Source of the DNA: Selaginella moellendorffii
Taxonomy: Eukaryota > Plantae > Lycopodiophyta
Reading direction: 5' to 3'
NCBI RefSeq assembly: GCF_000143415.4
Contig: NW_003314266.1
Span: 3,542,398-3,606,397 of the forward strand
Length of the DNA: 64,000 bases
Below the pieces are notes generated by a model. The model did not search any database, was not told the DNA's origin, and was given only the letters and a program-made list of their open reading frames with translations. Below, piece by piece: positions 38,794-47,575 of this stretch (position 1 is the stretch's first letter; every line of letters starts with the position of its first letter). The translations under genes and the position numbers were made by a program.

Positions 38794-40722
38794 ATGTTTA
38801 TAATTATAATTAAAATATTAATCTAAATGAATAACAACTATTAGATGGTAAAATATCCCAAAATATCTAAAAACTTATTCTAAGTATAATTTGCTTAAGC
38901 AAACTAAAATAATTTCCTGTGCTATACAACAACACTTAGTTTTGTTTGGAAAACTTTTTTTATTAATGATAGCACTTTTTATTTATATGACTTACTAAAA
39001 TTAGAAATTAATGATTTTAATAATGTTATTTTTTTAATAATAATATTTTTACATAAATATTATCCTAAAATGATAATATAATTTGAATATTATTTTATTT
39101 TAAATAAATTTAAAAAAATTAAAAAAATTTCAGATATGAAAAAATTTATTCTTAAAAGTAGTAGATAGAATGTTCTTTAATCAATTAATATATTAAGATC
39201 CCAATCCCTAGTTAGACTATATCAGCTTGTATAGAAGATTTTGGGGTAATCTTGACGTGAAGAATTTTTTAAAAAAATTAGAAGACAATACCATTGTCTT
39301 ATAGATCATAATAATCTTGTGTGGCAATCTTTCATATATATTGTTATGATGATTATTATCTTTTGTTGTTATGCAATCTTCAATTATGTAGTAGAGTAGA
39401 GCTTTATGCATTACTGATGGATGCAAATGCCTTCTGGCAGAAGCTCTGGGCTAAACTCTAGTGGCCAGAAATATTATATAGTTTCTATTGAAATTGTTTT
39501 GATTCTATCCAAGAATTGTTTGCGTGGAGAGTCAGCTCTAAGGATTGTGTTGTAAACATCAAGCCAAGAACTGGAAAGGTAAAGGCCAAAGTCTGGGTAT
39601 ATTAATTTTCCCATCATATTGGTGGGAGAAAGTTAAAAGCCTAGAGCTACTTATACATGTTGAGGATAAGTTCTTAATGAACCAGATTCATGTTTTTTAA
39701 GATGGTAAATAGGTTGATAACTAATTATATTAATGTTAAACCAATAAATCAGAGAAAAGTTGAAGAGAAAATCACAACCATTAGATTAAAGAAATATCTT
39801 GAAATGTGCCTGAATATTCTAGATATATTCCTTATACCCTTTTCTAAAGTTTTCAATTATATTGTTTTCCATTTGAAAAATGTAAATAATCAATATGCAT
39901 CAACTATTGATGAATTATTAGTTGAAACAAAACCATCATACTACAAACAGTTTCATGGTGTGTGGATCTTATTCTAGTTCATACTTAATAAGAGTTTTGC
40001 AGCCAAGCTTATAAACATTTATGTCCAATGAAGCTTATTTCTAAGTATCTATAATATGCTCAGTAAAGACTTTAACCATAACATATATAAGAAATCACTT
40101 GTACCCCAGATACTCCAATTACCAATATTAGCCATTGATCATACTATAAGATTTAATTTTAACCATAAGATGTAATATTTTAAGGATATTTTAAACACTC
40201 AGCAATAACAAACTTAATAATTTGTTGCATGTTGCATGCAACATTTGGTTTGCTTAATAACAGTGTCATTGAAATTGATCAGTAATTATAAACATGTTTA
40301 TAATTTATAAATCAAGATTAATTGTATTGCATATTAACCAATGGTAGAATAAAAAAGAATATATTGACATGTTTAGGAAATTTTATAAATTATAAACATG
40401 TTTATAATTTATAAATACAAGATTAATCTAAATAAATAACAACCATTAGATGGTAGAATATCCTAGAATATCCAGGCATATTCTAAATATATTCATTACC
40501 ATCTCAACCAAAAAGTTAAGAACGGTATTTAGTATAACCAAGAATAGAATCAAATACTGGCCAAACGCTTCTTAAATTGTTTATTAGATTTCTCTCTATA
40601 AAGAAAATCAAATCCAAGTCACTAGGGCGATCACGTTGCTAAGACGGCAATCAGTGGAAGAGGTGATTATTTTCTTCTGTCAGATCCGGCTTTCTGGAGC
40701 GATGGCGTTTGTCTTCCTCACT

Positions 40723-41872
40723 TCACCGCCGTGATCTCTTTCTCTTGGTTGCATCCTCCCATGCATGGAGCACGTAGTCGATTATATCTTGCAATCCTAC
40801 ACCGTGCTTCACCTGGAAAGCCAAGGTTACACACTAGTTCTCGTGGAGAAAATCGAAAAAAGAAAGCTCGACATTCATTTACCTGTGCAAAGACGAATGG
40901 ACCACCGTCACGCATTCTCAACGCGTCCCGTTCCATCACTTTCAAATCCGCTCCAACAGCCTGCGCTAGATCCGTTTTGTTGATAACCTGTGCGTTTTCT
41001 TCAGTCGAGAGTGGAGCGAGCAAAATGAAAAGTAACTTACAAGGAGATCGGCTTGTGTGATACCAGGCCCGCCTTTGCGAGGAATTTTGTCGCCCCCAGA
41101 GACATCGATAATATAGATGATGTAGTCGGCTAGTTCCCTGCTGAAGTTTGCGGCGAGGTTATCTGCAAACAAGAAACGAGTTAGTTGCGGTAGAAAACAG
41201 TGTTGTACCTCCTCCGGATTCGCACAAAAGTATGTCAGCCGAGAACTTTGTAGAGAGTTCTTCCAGTGGTCCCAAATTAATGCTGATGTCTTCTCGAATT
41301 GCAGCGTGGGGGCATCCACCAGTTTCGACAGCTCTTATTCGTTCGGGGGCAAGAGCACCGTTTTTAACCAGAAACTCGGCATCCTCTCGTGTAAAAATGT
41401 CGTTTGTAACCTGCACCAACCAGGATCTCTATTTTGCTTTGACTTCGAAGGGGCTCACTTACGGCTGCGATGCTGTATTTATCTCGCAAGGCCTGGCAAA
41501 GAGCAAGCATTAGAGCTGTCTTCCTGCAAGTCAAAACAAGAAGCAAGCGAAAGTGAGCCAAATTCACTGCAGAAAAGAGGAAAAATGTCACAGACCCTGT
41601 TCCAACCGGTCCTCCGATCCCGACAGTAAAAGCGCGCTCCGCAAAGTTGCGAGATTGCAGAGCCAAAGGCCGCCGGTTGAAGTAGCCAGGAGAATCGAGC
41701 TGCTCGTGCGTGTGAGGAGCCAAACCATCATGGGAGTGGTAGAGCTTTCCATCCGGACCCTTCCACTCGTTGGCCCTGAAAGAAGAAACGAGAAAGGTTG
41801 GCTGCTAGACCCCAAAGAAACAACATACCCATGAGCTTCGCCGTGATCGTGGTGGTGATGGTGCTCCGCCAT
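40723..41872 (-). CDS. UREG: Urease accessory protein G (multi-exon)
   Basis: His-rich N-terminus, P-loop [53 protein letters not shown]. Spliceosomal introns are present. Confidence 0.96.
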
Positions 41873-42402
41873 AGTTGATCTTTTCCTCCCTCTTCTAACA
41901 GCCGAGCCGTCGATTTAATTTTTTCCGATCATATCGGTCAAATCAACTTAGAATAGTGGCTCTTTGCCTCGTGGAACTTCAGCGTCGGTTATGCTGCCTG
42001 CCTGTAGCATCAAACCACGACCACCAATTACGTCGCAATCCAATCGCTCGAGAAACTCGATGAATTACCTCGATCAGCCTGCTGTGATTGAAAGCTTCCA
42101 GTATCACATTTTTAAAGATTCCTGCGATGCGAAGCTGTCAATCATCCCACCTCCAACGAACTCTGCAGCTCTCATTTACCACTAATCGCAGAGCTCCTTT
42201 TTAACCCGGCACGGCAGCACCTCGATCGATAATCCTTCTCGCAAGGATCAACCTCGTGCTCCGTTAGTGCTATGGTTCTGTAGCCAAGGAAGGAAAGCAC
42301 CCGTGTTAGTATATAAGGAACCACGCGGCATAAAGAGTTTCATCCAACCTCTTTTTGTTTTCCTCATCACGTCCTTCTGCGCGTTTTTTCTCTTTCGCAA
42401 AG

Positions 42403-42777
42403 ATGTGGAAGACGACGACGATCGCTCTCTTGATGGTTTTCGCGGCGCTTCAAGCTGAAACGACGAGTAAGCTCAAGTCTTTCTCCCTCCATCCTGTTGT
42501 TGTTTTCTAAATCTTTCTGGTATCTACAGCCGCTGTGCATCCGTCCTTGTATCACAGGAAGTTGCTAGAGCTGCAGCCTGGCCAGCCAATCTCGCCGTTT
42601 CGGTCCGTTCCATCTGGTCCCGACGACCCTTTGCACTACCACCGCCGCCGTGGACACAAAGAGTGCGTAGCGAGCGAAGCAAGCGCCTGTTCATCTTCTT
42701 CTACTGCGCCAACTGTCGAAAAACCTTTTGCTAGTGCTGCTACTGCTACTACTACCACTGCCACTGATGCTCCATAA
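42403..42777 (+). CDS. CLE-like secreted peptide precursor (2 exons, intron 42467-42529)
   Basis: Signal peptide MWKTTTIALLMVFAALQA, RKLL motif, CLE-like RSVPSGPDDPLHY at 42601-42639, and TATATAA at ~42310. Confidence 0.8.
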
Positions 42778-43057
42778 AGTTCCTGGTTTTCTAGTACTAC
42801 TCTAGTGCCGAGATGATCAATGCACAAGCTATGTATGTGCTCATTGTCACCTTCTAAGTAGATCGGCGTCTACGGAAAAGAGAGTGGGTGATGGACTGTT
42901 GTGCTCCAATACTTTCGTCTCAATATTGCTTCTGGTGGTCGAAGGATTCGTAAGGCTGTGAGAAAGAAAGAAGAGTTTCTAGAATGCTAAGAAAAACCGT
43001 GTACTATCGCCATTCTTGGGAGAAGAATAGGGGCTTGAATAGTACCTGAGAAAGGGC

Positions 43058-43324
43058 TCAGTCGCAAAATTGCTTGGGCTTGACGATGCTAACGCCGCTG
43101 ACGCTCGAGCTCTTGAGCATTTCCAGCTGCTTGCAGCCCTTGTTGAGCAGGTACTCGATCTGGGTGAAATTCTTGCGCTCGATGCCTACCGCATTCCTTC
43201 GGAACTCGGCGCTCACGATCGCCTCCATCTCGCGCCGCGCCTCCGGCGCCTTACTGCGGGCGACGCGGAGGAAGCTCCGATAAAGACTGAGGACCTGACG
43301 CTGGAGCCCCGAGAGCTTCATCAC
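43058..43324 (-). CDS. SDHAF1: LYR-motif protein, succinate dehydrogenase assembly factor 1-like
   Basis: LSGLQRQVLSLYR...EFRRN...IEYLL..G.KQLEML. Confidence 0.88.
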   Translation of the reverse strand: MMKLSGLQRQVLSLYRSFLRVARSKAPEARREMEAIVSAEFRRNAVGIERKNFTQIEYLLNKGCKQLEMLKSSSVSGVSIVKPKQFCD

Positions 43325-43418: not shown

Positions 43419-45347
43419 CTAAGATTCATAGCAGCAGAGATTGGAGAGCATCACGTATGGCGCGGACAGCCCGCGCGTTAGAGGGCTTTCCACCTCCATG
43501 GCGTTCTTGGCAGCCATGGCAGCCTTCTCCAAGCTCTCGTGGTAATTGGGCGCACCCAGCAAGGCCGCCCACGTCTCCGCATCCGGCGCAAACGGCATTG
43601 CCGCGATGAGTTCCTCCGCATCGCGGATCCGCCCAGCTCGCGCGAGTGCATTGATAATGCACGAGTAGTGGTTCTTCGATGGCGCCAATCCGTGTGCCGC
43701 GATCGCCAGCCCAAATTCGCGCAGCCCCTGCTCTCCCGCGTGGCCGCGCGCGGCTAGAACGCTCAGCAGCGTGATCTCGTCGGGCCGGAAGCCCTCTAGC
43801 GCCATGGATTCCACCAGCGCGATCGCTGACGCTGGATCTCCCGCCTGGGAGTATGCCGCGACGATCGAATTCCAGGATACGATGCTCTTGATCGGCATCG
43901 CATCGAAGAGCTCTCGCGCGCGATCCAAATGCCCCAGCTGGGCGTGCATGCTCAGCAAGCACGTCCACGCCACCACGCCCCTCTCGGGCATCCTCTGGAA
44001 TATCCCGTGCGCGCGGGGTATATTCCCGGCCGAGGAATATCCTTGGAGGATCGTGTTCCACGAGACATCGTCCCACTTGGGCATATTCTCGAACGTGGCA
44101 TCGGCATCCTCCAGCTGGCCGTTTCGGGAGTAGAGAGCCACCATGGCGTTGTGCGAGACGATGTCTCTGTGGGGCATTGCCTCGAAGAGAATCTTTCCAT
44201 CGTGGAGATTCCCAGACTCGGCATATGCCGTAATCAGTGTGTTCCAGGAGATTACGTCCCAGCGTGGCATCCGGTCGAACATCTGCTGCACATTCTGGAA
44301 GTGGAACTTTTCAGTGAATCCAGCCAGCATTGCGTTCCAGCTGATGGGATCTCTTCCATCCATCTCGTCGAAAATCCGCTTGGCCAATTCTGTGTCGCTC
44401 CTGTGGAACAATGCCCGGATCATGAGCGTTGATGAAATTGTGTCTTTCTGTGGCATTAACTCAAACATGGATTGAGCTTTGTCCATCTCCCCAGTTTCAA
44501 CGTGGCCAGAGAGAATGGCAGCAAATGTGATTGCATCCCTCTCTGGAATCCTGTTGAAGACATCGTAGGCTTCCTTGAGATTGCTGTGGTCCGAATAAGC
44601 TTGGATCATCGTGTTCCAAGAAACTAGGGTTCTCTGAGGCATCCAATCAAACAAGTTCTTAACATCTTCCAAATGCCCAATTCTGGCATTCACTGCTATC
44701 ATCTCGTTACAGGAGACAACATTCCACTCTGGCATTTTTGCAGCGGCTTCTTTGGCTTCAAGTAACAACATACTGTGATTTACTCCAAATACTGTGTTTC
44801 GAGAAGTGATATTCACCGAGGATGCCTGATTAAACACTTGGAACGTATCCTCCATTTTACCGCTTTGGGTAAATGCGGCAACAAGGATGATCCAAGAGAG
44901 TACGTTTCTTTCTGGCATTGAATCAAACAATTCCTTAGCTTCAACGTGATTCCCGTGGTGTGCATAGACAGTTATCATGGCATTGAAAGTTACCAGATCC
45001 CTCTTTGGCATAGCATCAAACATGTTTCTCGCGGATTCCAGATGCCCATTCTGAGCATATGCGTGGATCATGAGGCTCCACGAGTATAGATTAAGTTGGC
45101 GGATGCCCATGAATGCCTGGGACGCATCCTCCACGCTTCCAAGCCTTCCGTACACCTGGATCATCGTGTTGGCGAGAAACCTATTGTCGCAGTGATCGCT
45201 GTGGACGATATGGGCGTGGAGGCGCTTGGCATCGGTATAGTTTTTGCATTCTTTGAGGAGCTTGTGGAATCGGTCCTGCCCACGCAGCGCATTCATATCA
45301 TTCGATGGAATCGCGGGGAACGGAGCTCCAGCCCACCAAGGATTCAT
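43419..45347 (-). CDS. PLS-class PPR protein rich in 31-aa motifs, E extension, no DYW (probable start 45296)
   Basis: Tandem F..MP.R...SWN.M...Y....G repeats, HYSCIINALARAG, PYVMLSN. Confidence 0.92.
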   Translation of the reverse strand: MNPWWAGAPFPAIPSNDMNALRGQDRFHKLLKECKNYTDAKRLHAHIVHSDHCDNRFLANTMIQVYGRLGSVEDASQAFMGIRQLNLYSWSLMIHAYAQNGHLESARNMFDAMPKRDLVTFNAMITVYAHHGNHVEAKELFDSMPERNVLSWIILVAAFTQSGKMEDTFQVFNQASSVNITSRNTVFGVNHSMLLLEAKEAAAKMPEWNVVSCNEMIAVNARIGHLEDVKNLFDWMPQRTLVSWNTMIQAYSDHSNLKEAYDVFNRIPERDAITFAAILSGHVETGEMDKAQSMFELMPQKDTISSTLMIRALFHRSDTELAKRIFDEMDGRDPISWNAMLAGFTEKFHFQNVQQMFDRMPRWDVISWNTLITAYAESGNLHDGKILFEAMPHRDIVSHNAMVALYSRNGQLEDADATFENMPKWDDVSWNTILQGYSSAGNIPRAHGIFQRMPERGVVAWTCLLSMHAQLGHLDRARELFDAMPIKSIVSWNSIVAAYSQAGDPASAIALVESMALEGFRPDEITLLSVLAARGHAGEQGLREFGLAIAAHGLAPSKNHYSCIINALARAGRIRDAEELIAAMPFAPDAETWAALLGAPNYHESLEKAAMAAKNAMEVESPLTRGLSAPYVMLSNLCCYES

Positions 45348-47575
45348 TCGCCAGGATCATCAAGTCTTGCGCCATCGCTGGGAATCTCACCCAGGGACGG
45401 CGAATTCACTCGCAGATTCTTCAGAGCAGCCACTCTAGCGACACGTTTCTAGCGAATCTTTTGGTGCAAATGTATGGGAAGTGCGGGAGTGTTGACGATG
45501 CAGCGAAGGTTTTCGAGCGGATCAAGCGCCTCAACTCTTTTTCCTGGAGCATTATGATTCAAGCATATGCCCAAAACGGGCATCTTGCTCAAGCACAAGC
45601 TTTGTTCGATCGAATGCCGGGAAAAAACCTGGAATCTTGGAATGCATTGCTCACTGCTTATGCCAGATCTGGAAAACTGGAGAAAGCCCAAGAGATTTTT
45701 GACAGCATGCCTGTGAAGAACACCGTCACCATCAATGCGATGCTCTCCGCATATGCCACAAACGGGCATATTGGCGATGCTTGGAATCTTTTCGAGACAA
45801 TGGGGCATCGCGACCGAATATCCTGGAACACAATGCTTCAGGGATTTTCTCTCAGTGGTCAGCTTGCAAAATTAAAGGATCTTTTTTATGATATGCCATC
45901 TCCAGATGTAGTTTCATGGACTTGTGTGATTACAGCATATGCCCAACACGGGCATTTGGAATATGCCCGTGCCATGTTTGATGCGGCGCCCGTACGGAAC
46001 GAGGTCACCTGGAACTCCATGATCACTGCGTACGGAGAGAATGCCGATGTTTCGGAAGCAAAAGTTTTGTTTGATTCGATGCCAAATCCAAATGTTGTGT
46101 CGTGGAACGCTCTCGTCCAAGCCTATGTCAATGCAGATGATTTCCGGGGAGCAAAGGTGGTGTTTGATCTAATTCCGGAACCGAATGTTATTTCGTGGAC
46201 CACCATGCTTGCTGCTTATGCCCAAAGCGGCCAACTTGAGAAAGCGAAGAGAATTTTCGAAGATATGCCGCAAAAGAACGTTGTTTCCTGGACTGTTATG
46301 CTCTCTGCTTATGCCGAAAACGGGCATTTACGAGATGCAGAGATTCTCTTTGAGCATATACCACAAAAGAACAATCTGACTTGGAACGCAATGTTGCTGG
46401 CTTACGTCCAAAGAGGTGATATAGAGATGGCGAAGAGATTCTTTGACAAGATTCCTTCTCCATGTACAATAGCCTGGAACACAATGCTTCAAGTGTTTAC
46501 CCAGCGTGGAAATCTGGACGAAGCTTTGGCTTTCTTTGAGCATATTCCCGATAAAAACTCCACGTCATGGACAACTATGATTCTTGCTCTCGCGAAGAAT
46601 GGTCGAATAGATGAAGCAAAAGCTATGTTTGTAAAGTCACTACCTCTCTACGATCTTGTGTCTTGGACTGCATTGCTTGGCGGCTATGCTCAAACTTGCG
46701 ATGGATTTGTGGAGGAGGCCAAAGCAATCTTTGAAGCTATGCCAGAATGGGATATGGTAACTTGGAACACTATGATTTCGGTTTATGGCTTGAACAATCG
46801 CTTAGAAAACGCTAGAGCCTTGTTTGATTCCATGCCAGCATGGGATATAGTTACATGGAACACACTGCTTTCTATCTATGCCCAATCTGGATATAGCGAA
46901 GAATGTAAAAACCTCTTTGAAAGTATGCCATTCTTAACAGCGATATCTGTAAATGCAATGATATTGGGGTGTGATTCTCTCCAGGAGTCCAAGAGTTACT
47001 TTGATACGTGCATACCTCCTGGAGAGAGGGATATTCTTTGCTGGAGTTCTATGATGCTTGCATATACCCGGGCTGGGCATATACTCAGAGCGAAGAGAAT
47101 GTTTGATGGGATGCCCGAAAAGGACTTGGTGGTGTGGAATATGATGGTGGAGGCGTATGGACAAGGTGGTCATGGAGACAACGCTGTGGATGTGTTTAGA
47201 AAAATGGAGGTGGAGGGTATCAAGCCTGATAAGATTGCTTATGTGAGTGTCTTGGCAGCTTGCAGCCATGGAGGTCTTTTGGATGAGGCTTGTGCGAATT
47301 TCTCCAACATGAGCGATGCGCATGGATATGTTCCTGAGGATCAGCATTTGTGTTGCTTGGTGGATGTTCTTGGGAGGACCGGGAAGTTGAAAGAGGCCGA
47401 GGAGTTGATCGAGGCTATGCCGTGTGAGATTGGATCCGTGGCTTGGGAGTGCTTGCTTGGAGCTTGTAAAATCTATAAGAATGCCGAGTATGGGCAAAAG
47501 GCAGTCCAGAAGATTGGAGCTTTGGTACCAGAGAAGGCCACTTTGTACTTGTCTATTGAAGCTATATCCCAATAA
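45305..47575 (+). CDS. PLS-class PPR protein rich in 31-aa motifs, E extension, no DYW
   Basis: 756-aa intronless ORF with about 20 PPR motifs, ACSHGGLLDE, CLVDVLGRTG. Confidence 0.94.
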   Translation: MESRGTELQPTKDSFARIIKSCAIAGNLTQGRRIHSQILQSSHSSDTFLANLLVQMYGKCGSVDDAAKVFERIKRLNSFSWSIMIQAYAQNGHLAQAQALFDRMPGKNLESWNALLTAYARSGKLEKAQEIFDSMPVKNTVTINAMLSAYATNGHIGDAWNLFETMGHRDRISWNTMLQGFSLSGQLAKLKDLFYDMPSPDVVSWTCVITAYAQHGHLEYARAMFDAAPVRNEVTWNSMITAYGENADVSEAKVLFDSMPNPNVVSWNALVQAYVNADDFRGAKVVFDLIPEPNVISWTTMLAAYAQSGQLEKAKRIFEDMPQKNVVSWTVMLSAYAENGHLRDAEILFEHIPQKNNLTWNAMLLAYVQRGDIEMAKRFFDKIPSPCTIAWNTMLQVFTQRGNLDEALAFFEHIPDKNSTSWTTMILALAKNGRIDEAKAMFVKSLPLYDLVSWTALLGGYAQTCDGFVEEAKAIFEAMPEWDMVTWNTMISVYGLNNRLENARALFDSMPAWDIVTWNTLLSIYAQSGYSEECKNLFESMPFLTAISVNAMILGCDSLQESKSYFDTCIPPGERDILCWSSMMLAYTRAGHILRAKRMFDGMPEKDLVVWNMMVEAYGQGGHGDNAVDVFRKMEVEGIKPDKIAYVSVLAACSHGGLLDEACANFSNMSDAHGYVPEDQHLCCLVDVLGRTGKLKEAEELIEAMPCEIGSVAWECLLGACKIYKNAEYGQKAVQKIGALVPEKATLYLSIEAISQ

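What the first reader, a model, noticed from the sequence alone, without database searches (positions are those of the whole stretch)
42403..42777. Atypical CLE peptide gene: extra Asp in the core and a long C-terminal extension
A two-exon secreted precursor that the ORF track does not show as a whole. It has a signal peptide, an RKLL subtilase-type motif, then RSVPSGPDDPLHY. Canonical CLE is the 12-mer RxVPxGPDPLH(N/H). Here a GAC codon is doubled and the last residue is Tyr. It is followed by HRRR and a 46-aa tail with two Cys and a Ser/Thr/Ala tract. It could be a ligand of altered receptor specificity, an antagonist or a new CLE subclass.
Basis: partly seen in the sequence, partly recalled or inferred. 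Interest (0 to 1): 0.75.

Follow-up and report, generated by a model that had tools for sequence, protein, structure and literature searches.

The report
Spikemoss CLE-like gene with extra Asp
This is a real small secreted-protein gene of the spikemoss Selaginella moellendorffii, already annotated as hypothetical, whose plant peptide-hormone (CLE) motif carries one extra aspartate and ends in tyrosine; I found no evidence that it is expressed, conserved or active.

Summary
A two-exon ORF (42403-42466, 42530-77) encodes 103 aa: a signal peptide, RKLL, RSVPSGPDDPLHY, HRRR and a Cys/Ser/Thr/Ala tail. The window is Selaginella moellendorffii scaffold GL377570.1. The model is already in GenBank as hypothetical protein SELMODRAFT_406665 (UniProt D8R128, 'Secreted protein'), with an allele on the second haplotype.

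GACGAC is not an error. It is present in both reference haplotypes and in all four public runs laid.

The motif is absent from the two S. moellendorffii CLE lists I could check, and from the paper library's main texts.

Function is unproven. Three transcriptome assemblies keep the modelled intron. They show only minus-strand splice junctions, so the RNA seen is antisense and links the flanking LYR and CobW genes. Haplotype pN/pS is 0.69, which is uninformative. A search of 1.84 billion proteins found no relative.

The structural literature suggests the extra residue and terminal Tyr would disturb canonical receptor fit.

Verdict: a CLE-derived variant gene, either a ligand of changed activity or a decaying paralogue. 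Interest is modest.

The scan noted this same stretch before (s1-408488). It also noted other 13-residue CLE variants in SmCLE7 on other DNA.

The parts
42310..42317 (+). TATA-like box (TATATAAG), 86-93 nt upstream of the ATG. It lies inside the minus-strand intron 42278-42348.
   Evidence: Read. The core is kept in haplotype 2 despite a 3-nt deletion at 42316-42318. Its function is inferred only.
42403..42466 (+). Exon 1: start codon and signal peptide. The n-region is MWK, the h-region is IALLMVFAAL, and the likely cut is after Ala18 (LQA|E), i.e. 42403-42456.
   Evidence: UniRef names the protein 'Secreted protein'. The cleavage site is my inference by inspection; no signal-peptide predictor was available.
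42467..42529 (+). Modelled 63-nt GT-AG intron, phase 1.
   Evidence: Splice signals were read and are intact in both haplotypes. The intron is retained in every RNA contig laid.
42530..42777 (+). Exon 2: variable region, CLE-like motif, basic site, tail and stop codon.
   Evidence: Exon 2 searched by reference returns SELMODRAFT_406665 at 100% identity.
42556..42567 (+). RKLL (R31-L34), which fits the RxxL/RxLx subtilase (S1P/SBT6.1, SBT3.5) consensus.
   Evidence: consensus from PMC13082318. A similar RKLL follows the signal peptide of the canonical Sm411648. It is a short motif and weak evidence.
42601..42639 (+). CLE-like motif RSVPSGPDDPLHY (R46-Y58). The doubled GAC codon is at 42622-42627 and the Tyr codon TAC at 42637-42639.
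   Evidence: Invariant in both haplotypes and in four runs.
42640..42651 (+). HRRR, a basic stretch directly after the motif and a candidate C-terminal processing site.
   Evidence: Arg or Lys after the CLE motif is removed by the carboxypeptidase SOL1 in Arabidopsis CLE19 (PMC4082320; PMC13082318). Its use here is inferred.
42652..42774 (+). 41-aa tail with C67 and C75 and a Ser/Thr/Ala tract. It is low-complexity and length-variable between alleles.
   Evidence: A 6-nt in-frame deletion at 42746 is seen in run X12. There is no Pfam family above cut-off.
42278..42348 (-). Minus-strand intron (CT..AC on the + strand), spliced out in RNA contigs of three runs.
   Evidence: table 5. It is absent from DNA run X12 and present as DNA in both haplotypes, so it is a splice and not a deletion.
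42349..42931 (-). Minus-strand exon that covers the whole CLE-like gene in antisense.
   Evidence: tables 5 and 8. Contigs run 42349-42884 or 42349-43099 without the sense splice. Joints 42931|43046 and 42955|43046 have CT..AC ends.
43058..43324 (-). Neighbouring LYR-family gene (Complex1_LYR), upstream end of the antisense RNA.
   Evidence: Pfam PF05347, E = 7e-16; annotated gene; 0 nonsynonymous to 3 synonymous changes between haplotypes.
40723..41872 (-). Neighbouring CobW-type GTPase gene with a His-rich N-terminus, downstream end of the antisense RNA.
   Evidence: Annotated gene with PF02492; ORF read.

Best explanation
The locus is a genuine S. moellendorffii gene derived from the CLE peptide-hormone family. 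It is annotated only as hypothetical protein SELMODRAFT_406665 / LOC9633624.

It encodes a 103-aa prepropeptide: a signal peptide, a short variable region, a CLE-type motif, a basic HRRR site and a low-complexity tail. Two simple changes separate its motif from the canonical SmCLE9-11 type (RLVPSGPDPLHH). One is a tandem duplication of a single GAC codon, which lengthens the core between the Gly-Pro kink and the C-terminal His. The other is Tyr in place of the terminal His/Asn. Both are fixed in every allele seen.

Inferred mechanism if the gene is expressed: secretion; cleavage before Arg46; cleavage at HRRR followed by trimming of the basic residues; proline hydroxylation. The product would be a 13- or 14-residue CLE-like peptide. 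Its register between the kink and the C-terminal anchor is shifted by one residue, so it should bind canonical CLV1/BAM/TDR-type pockets weakly or differently.

Shown here: the gene anatomy, the reality of the variant, the species and annotation, and the antisense RNA. Inferred: sense expression, processing and any activity.
For: - Anatomy: read directly and identical to a GenBank/RefSeq/UniProt protein.
- Not chance: it is the only CLE-like core in six frames of the window, with 0 in 200 shuffles.
- Splice signals: good, with a 63-nt phase-1 intron joining the signal-peptide exon in frame.
- Codon usage: log-odds are positive only in the annotated frame (+6.2, against -13 to -22 in the other five frames).
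- Allele integrity: ORF, splice sites and motif are intact in two reference haplotypes and in runs X1, X5, X12 and X15. The only indel in the CDS is in frame, while the flanks carry out-of-frame indels.
- Processing context: basic residues follow the motif as in other CLEs, and a comparable RKLL occurs in the canonical Sm411648.
- Receptor fit: in the PXY-TDIF structure, Hyp4/Gly6/Hyp7/Pro9 form the kink, residue 8 hydrogen-bonds to the receptor, and the free C-terminal Asn/His is anchored by two Arg. [quoted passage not shown]
Against: - No sense transcript: contigs of three RNA-type runs keep the modelled intron, and their only strand-diagnostic junctions are minus-strand. No assembled public contig other than the genome encodes the exact spliced product.
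- No measurable constraint: 6 nonsynonymous to 3 synonymous changes between haplotypes (pN/pS 0.69). The substitution-free run over the motif is not unusual (P = 0.69).
- No relative with the insertion, and no relative at all beyond the species, in 5.8 billion (word search) or 1.84 billion (HMMER) proteins. The few other hits are translated tandem repeats.
- The two changes hit exactly the features that canonical receptors read, which is also what decay would look like.
Confidence: 0.55

Rival explanations
1. A decaying CLE paralogue. It was once a canonical CLE gene and is now under relaxed constraint. The codon duplication and the His/Asn-to-Tyr change inactivated the ligand. The ORF is still open only because too little time has passed.
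For: - Both changes hit receptor-critical features (PMC4856767).
- pN/pS is 0.69, and CDS divergence (2.9%) equals that of the flanks (about 3%). The neighbouring LYR gene shows 0 nonsynonymous to 3 synonymous changes.
- No sense spliced RNA was seen, and the locus lies inside an antisense transcript.
- No orthologue was found.
- The low-complexity tail varies in length.
Against: - The ORF, signal peptide, splice sites and motif are intact in all five alleles seen.
- Codon usage is positive only in frame.
- The precursor shows no similarity outside the motif to the other S. moellendorffii CLEs I could view. The gene is therefore old, yet it has stayed open.
- With only 13 of 103 codons expected to be constrained, a pN/pS of 0.69 is also what a working CLE gene would give, so that test has no power.
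Confidence: 0.3
2. Not a gene. It is an accidental ORF inside the untranslated part of minus-strand LYR/CobW transcripts, and ab initio gene finders over-predicted it.
For: The only RNA evidence is antisense. JGI protein ids in the 400,000 range, as here, may be ab initio models; this is my recollection and was not checked. Full-length searches found no homologue.
Against: A 10-residue match to the CLE core occurs 0 times in 200 shuffles. It sits behind a signal peptide and an in-frame canonical intron and is followed by basic residues. Only this frame has coding-like codon usage.
Confidence: 0.05
3. GACGAC is a sequencing or assembly error, or a private null allele of the reference plant.
For: None found.
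Against: The same six bases are present in the second reference haplotype. They are also present in contigs of four runs from four studies, one of them DNA, including alleles that differ at 21 other positions in 900 nt.
Confidence: 0.01

Closest known systems
Canonical R-type CLE peptides of S. moellendorffii: SmCLE9/10/11 (RLVPSGPDPLHH; Sm408679), and Arabidopsis CLV3 (RTVPSGPDPLHH)
   Same: - A small secreted prepropeptide with a signal peptide.
- An Arg-initiated motif. VPSGPD, PLH and the leading Arg all match.
- Basic residues directly after the motif (HHRIR in Sm408679, HYHRRR here).
- The motif strings come from the Whitewoods 2018 supplement and the Zhang 2020 supplement.
   Different: - One extra Asp between Pro7 and Pro9, giving a 13-residue core.
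- Tyr instead of His/Asn at the last position.
- Ser at position 2.
- A 41-aa tail after the basic site, against 6 aa in Sm408679.
- No similarity outside the motif.
- Absent from both catalogues.
Other 13-residue CLE-derived motifs noted by this scan in SmCLE7 (s1-420840, s1-408353)
   Same: They are in the same genome and reflect the same idea: CLE-like modules that depart from the 12-residue rule.
   Different: The SmCLE7 precursor sequence in Zhang 2020 (Sm86322) has no GPDDP motif. Those variants are a different sequence type and sit in a multi-motif precursor. No shared origin is shown.
IDA/IDL and PIP peptide families (other ligands of subfamily XI LRR receptor kinases)
   Same: Pro-rich peptides of 12-14 residues that end in His-Asn or Gly-His. 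They are cut from the C-terminal part of small secreted precursors and are anchored through the free C-terminus.
   Different: The core here (VPSGPD..PLH) is of CLE type, not the PSAPSKRHN type. The spacing from the Gly-Pro (Ala-Pro in IDA) to the His is 4 residues here, against 3 in both CLE and IDA. This comparison rests on my own knowledge of the IDA consensus and on the IDA sequence cited.

Membership tests
CLE (CLAVATA3/ESR-related) peptide precursors | N-terminal secretion signal on a small (about 80-170 aa) precursor | tested here: met
   The product is 103 aa with an MWK n-region, a 10-residue hydrophobic core and LQA|E. UniRef names it 'Secreted protein'. The signal was judged by inspection; no SignalP run was possible.
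CLE (CLAVATA3/ESR-related) peptide precursors | A 12-residue CLE motif, R/H-x-V/I-P-x-G-P-D/N-P-L/I-H-N/H, with fixed spacing | tested here: not met
   The regular expressions for the canonical 12-mer and its strict core find nothing in the window. The locus matches only when one extra residue is allowed after Asp8. Ten of the 12 canonical positions agree.
CLE (CLAVATA3/ESR-related) peptide precursors | Mature peptide ends in Asn or His with a free carboxylate | tested here: inconclusive
   The aligned last residue is Tyr58, not Asn or His. His59 follows it, so a 14-mer ending in His is conceivable. The rule is taken from PMC4856767. The real C-terminus is unknown.
CLE (CLAVATA3/ESR-related) peptide precursors | Listed in published CLE catalogues of the species | tested here: not met
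   It is not among the 15 SmCLE motifs (Whitewoods 2018 supplement) or the 8 S. moellendorffii CLEs of Zhang 2020. The motif strings are absent from the main texts of the paper library. Goad et al. 2017 and the original table of Miwa et al. 2009 could not be read.
CLE (CLAVATA3/ESR-related) peptide precursors | Expressed and processed to a hydroxyprolinated or arabinosylated peptide of 12-13 residues | tested here: inconclusive
   RNA contigs cover the locus but are antisense and keep the sense intron. Contigs cannot exclude a rare sense transcript. Processing cannot be tested with these tools.
CLE (CLAVATA3/ESR-related) peptide precursors | Perceived by CLV1/BAM/TDR-clade LRR receptor kinases | not testable with these tools
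   S. moellendorffii has 14 subfamily XI receptors, with members in all seven clades (PMC8462819). Complex prediction asks for chains of 30 residues or more and offers reference sequences only from bacteria, archaea and phages, so I ran no docking job.

The most novel reading that the evidence does not exclude
The gene is the first recognised member of a lycophyte CLE offshoot whose mature peptide has a 13-residue core (PDDP) and an aromatic or extended C-terminus. It would be read by a diverged subfamily XI receptor, or would act as a natural antagonist of canonical CLE signalling. It would also be regulated by the antisense LYR/CobW transcript that covers it.
Probability: 0.15. Interest if true: 0.6.

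Novelty: new variant of a known kind. Interest (0 to 1): 0.33.

Why it matters
CLE peptides are defined by a rigid 12-residue register, which the receptors read from a central kink to a C-terminal anchor. A naturally fixed one-residue insertion in that register is a ready-made test of how much length change the ligand-receptor pair tolerates. If active, it would be a possible natural antagonist or a specificity switch in an early-diverging vascular plant.

The case also shows that catalogues built on 12-mer scoring miss such genes. If the gene turns out to be silent, it is simply a snapshot of how a peptide-hormone gene decays.

Tried and rejected
- Canonical CLE pattern in the window: none.
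- Pfam on exon 2: only sub-threshold noise (VWA_N2, IMUP).
- Word-index protein search with exon 2: only the gene itself.
- Exhaustive HMMER search with the database protein: itself plus five hits that are translated tandem repeats in long proteins. Rejected as spurious.
- ESM Atlas: no look-alike; the Atlas's own model is disordered (pLDDT 0.52).
I did not repeat it, because a motif-only match cannot reach E <= 10 in that database.
- Accession and id search in papers: the number string matched unrelated papers, and none of the listed papers held any of the four accession strings.
- Supplements of Furumizu 2021 and the 2024 fern CLAVATA paper are not held. Goad 2017 is not held.
- RNA structure at the motif: no better than shuffles (z = 0.71).
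- Bacterial-type promoter and terminator scan: meaningless for a plant.
- Tyrosine sulfation of Tyr58: rejected, because it has no Asp-Tyr context.
- GPI anchoring of the tail: rejected, because there is no C-terminal hydrophobic stretch. Both judgements are by inspection.
- Haplotype dN/dS and substitution-free-run tests: run, but they lack the power to separate function from decay.
- Handling of the spliced model: it was never typed or joined for a search tool. Exon 2 was searched by reference, and later searches used the identical database record P0001. Exons were concatenated only inside scripts, for codon counting.

Full report
**What is in the sequence.** On the + strand an ATG at 42403 opens a 64-nt exon. 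It ends at a GTAAGC donor (42467). A 63-nt intron follows, with a pyrimidine tract and AG at 42528-42529. A second exon runs from 42530 to TAA at 42775-42777. The joined product is 103 aa:
- a signal peptide (MWK, a ten-residue hydrophobic core, LQA|E);
- a 27-residue variable region that contains RKLL (42556-42567);
- RSVPSGPDDPLHY (42601-42639, with GACGAC at 42622-42627);
- HRRR (42640-42651);
- a 41-residue tail with two Cys and a Ser/Thr/Ala tract.

A six-frame scan finds this as the only CLE-like core in the window and none in 200 shuffled windows. No canonical 12-mer is present.

**Whose gene it is.** Exon 2, searched by reference, returns one protein at 100% identity: hypothetical protein SELMODRAFT_406665 of Selaginella moellendorffii. 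Its other names are EFJ33831.1, XP_002964993.1, LOC9633624 and UniProt D8R128 'Secreted protein'. Its 103 residues are exactly the two-exon model. The window is scaffold GL377570.1, at about 3.54-3.61 Mb. The second haplotype of the reference assembly (GL377598.1) carries an allele, XP_024537968.1, that is 94% identical. So the model is not hidden. It is annotated, but not recognised as a CLE.

**Is the extra Asp real?** Yes. The two haplotypes differ at nine CDS positions, but GACGAC and the stretch 42573-42647 are identical. Contigs from four public runs of four studies (three of RNA type, one DNA) all cover the motif without a difference. Two of them carry alleles with other changes: A14T, H25N or H25Y, L36Q, K65N, and a 6-nt in-frame deletion in the tail. 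The variant is fixed in everything sampled. The simplest origin is slippage duplication of one GAC codon in a canonical ...GGT CCC GAC CCT TTG CAC... core, plus a first-position change giving TAC. This origin is my inference from the sequence.

**Is it a known CLE?** It is not among the 15 SmCLE motifs used by Whitewoods et al. 2018. It is not among the eight S. moellendorffii CLEs of Zhang et al. 2020, whose 12-mer scoring cannot accept an insertion. The motif strings occur nowhere in the main texts of the paper library. The nearest canonical motif is SmCLE9-11, RLVPSGPDPLHH, which is followed by RIR. A comparable RKLL follows the signal peptide of the canonical Sm411648. Goad et al. 2017 could not be read.

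**Expression.** This is the weak point. RNA-type contigs of runs X1, X5 and X15 cover the whole locus but keep the modelled intron. Instead they skip 42278-42348. In X5 and X15 they also skip 42932-43045 or 42956-43045, always with CT..AC ends. These are GT-AG introns of the minus strand. The 71-nt skip is absent from the DNA run and present as DNA in both haplotypes, so it is splicing.

The shares of words held (0.86-0.89 in X1-X6) fit the loss of one intron, not two. That reading is my own arithmetic.

The flanking genes are both on the minus strand: a Complex1_LYR gene (43058-43324; Pfam E = 7e-16) and a CobW-type GTPase (40723-41872). The 2185-nt contig of X1 appears, by its length, to run from one through the other. 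This is an inference. The detectable RNA is therefore antisense. It is a long UTR or read-through transcript whose exon 42349-42931 covers the CLE-like gene. The TATA-like box at 42310-42317 sits inside the antisense intron.

No public assembly other than the genome encodes the exact spliced product. Contigs drop rare variants, and (from general knowledge) CLE genes are typically expressed in few cells. A rare sense mRNA is therefore not excluded.

**Constraint.** Between haplotypes the CDS shows 6 nonsynonymous and 3 synonymous changes (pN/pS 0.69). The neighbouring LYR ORF shows 0 and 3. CDS divergence (2.9%) equals that of the flanks. A 75-nt substitution-free run is expected by chance (P = 0.69). 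Only 13 of the 103 codons would be constrained in a working CLE gene, so this test cannot separate function from decay.

Mild support for coding comes from two observations. Codon-usage log-odds are positive only in the annotated frame (+6.2, against -13 to -22). The only CDS indel seen is in frame, whereas the flanks carry 1-, 2-, 3- and 13-nt indels.

**Relatives.** None were found. The word search gave only the gene itself. The exhaustive HMMER search of 1.84 billion representatives gave itself plus five long proteins that are translated tandem repeats. The ESM Atlas gave nothing. This is usual for CLE precursors, which share only the motif. It also means that no second gene with the PDDP core is known, so a 'subclass' currently has one member. 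Other 13-residue CLE variants that this scan noted in SmCLE7 are of a different sequence type.

**How it would work.** The PXY-TDIF structure describes three features. Hyp4, Gly6, Hyp7 and Pro9 form a central kink. Residue 8 hydrogen-bonds to a DxSxN motif. The free C-terminal Asn is held by two Arg and a DxS motif that are conserved among CLE receptors. [quoted passage not shown]

An extra residue between Pro7 and Pro9 shifts the register between kink and anchor, and Tyr is not an accepted last residue. I therefore infer weakened or altered binding to canonical receptors.

Processing would follow the general scheme: signal-peptide removal, subtilase cleavage before Arg46, cleavage at HRRR and removal of basic residues by a SOL1-type carboxypeptidase (PMC4082320; PMC13082318). 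All of this is inferred by analogy.

**Verdict.**
- The locus is a CLE-derived variant gene. It fails the strict 12-mer definition, so I do not file it as a canonical CLE.
- Whether it is a live ligand with changed activity (my best guess, 0.55 including the identity claim) or a decaying paralogue (0.3) cannot be settled with contig-level RNA data and one species.
- Interest is modest. It is a nice natural experiment on CLE register, but a single orphan gene without expression or conservation evidence.

Noticed in passing
window 40723-43324, minus strand: RNA contigs join the LYR gene, the 1.2-kb spacer and the CobW GTPase gene into one minus-strand transcript. It has introns at 42278-42348 and, alternatively, 42932-43045 or 42956-43045 (retained in run X1). 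All of them lie outside the two coding regions. It is either a read-through or bicistronic-type RNA, or a very long CobW 5' UTR.
   Followed up: partly
window 41588-41872, minus strand: The first exon of the CobW-type GTPase begins [10 protein letters not shown]..., a His-rich N-terminus as in zinc-chaperone-type CobW proteins. The second haplotype has a 9-nt in-frame insertion there.
   Followed up: no
window 43058-43324, minus strand: The LYR-motif protein (PF05347) is identical in both haplotypes despite three synonymous differences. The two haplotype annotations give it different lengths (87 and 76 aa).
   Followed up: partly
window 39800-40600 (L002/L001 alignment): The haplotype alignment breaks down here: 38-285 differing columns per 200 nt, against 2-10 elsewhere. 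This suggests a large indel or a haplotype-specific insertion downstream of the CobW gene.
   Followed up: no
window 43419-47575: Two long ORFs on opposite strands (642 aa on the minus strand, 756 aa on the plus strand) have start codons that overlap at 45305-45347. These are the divergent PPR pair already noted by the scan (s1-408594).
   Followed up: no
proteins P0003, P0007: The protein library holds 'proteins' that are translations of long tandem DNA repeats. They reach E of about 1e-5 against a short low-complexity query through summed repeats, which is a trap for orphan-gene searches.
   Followed up: yes
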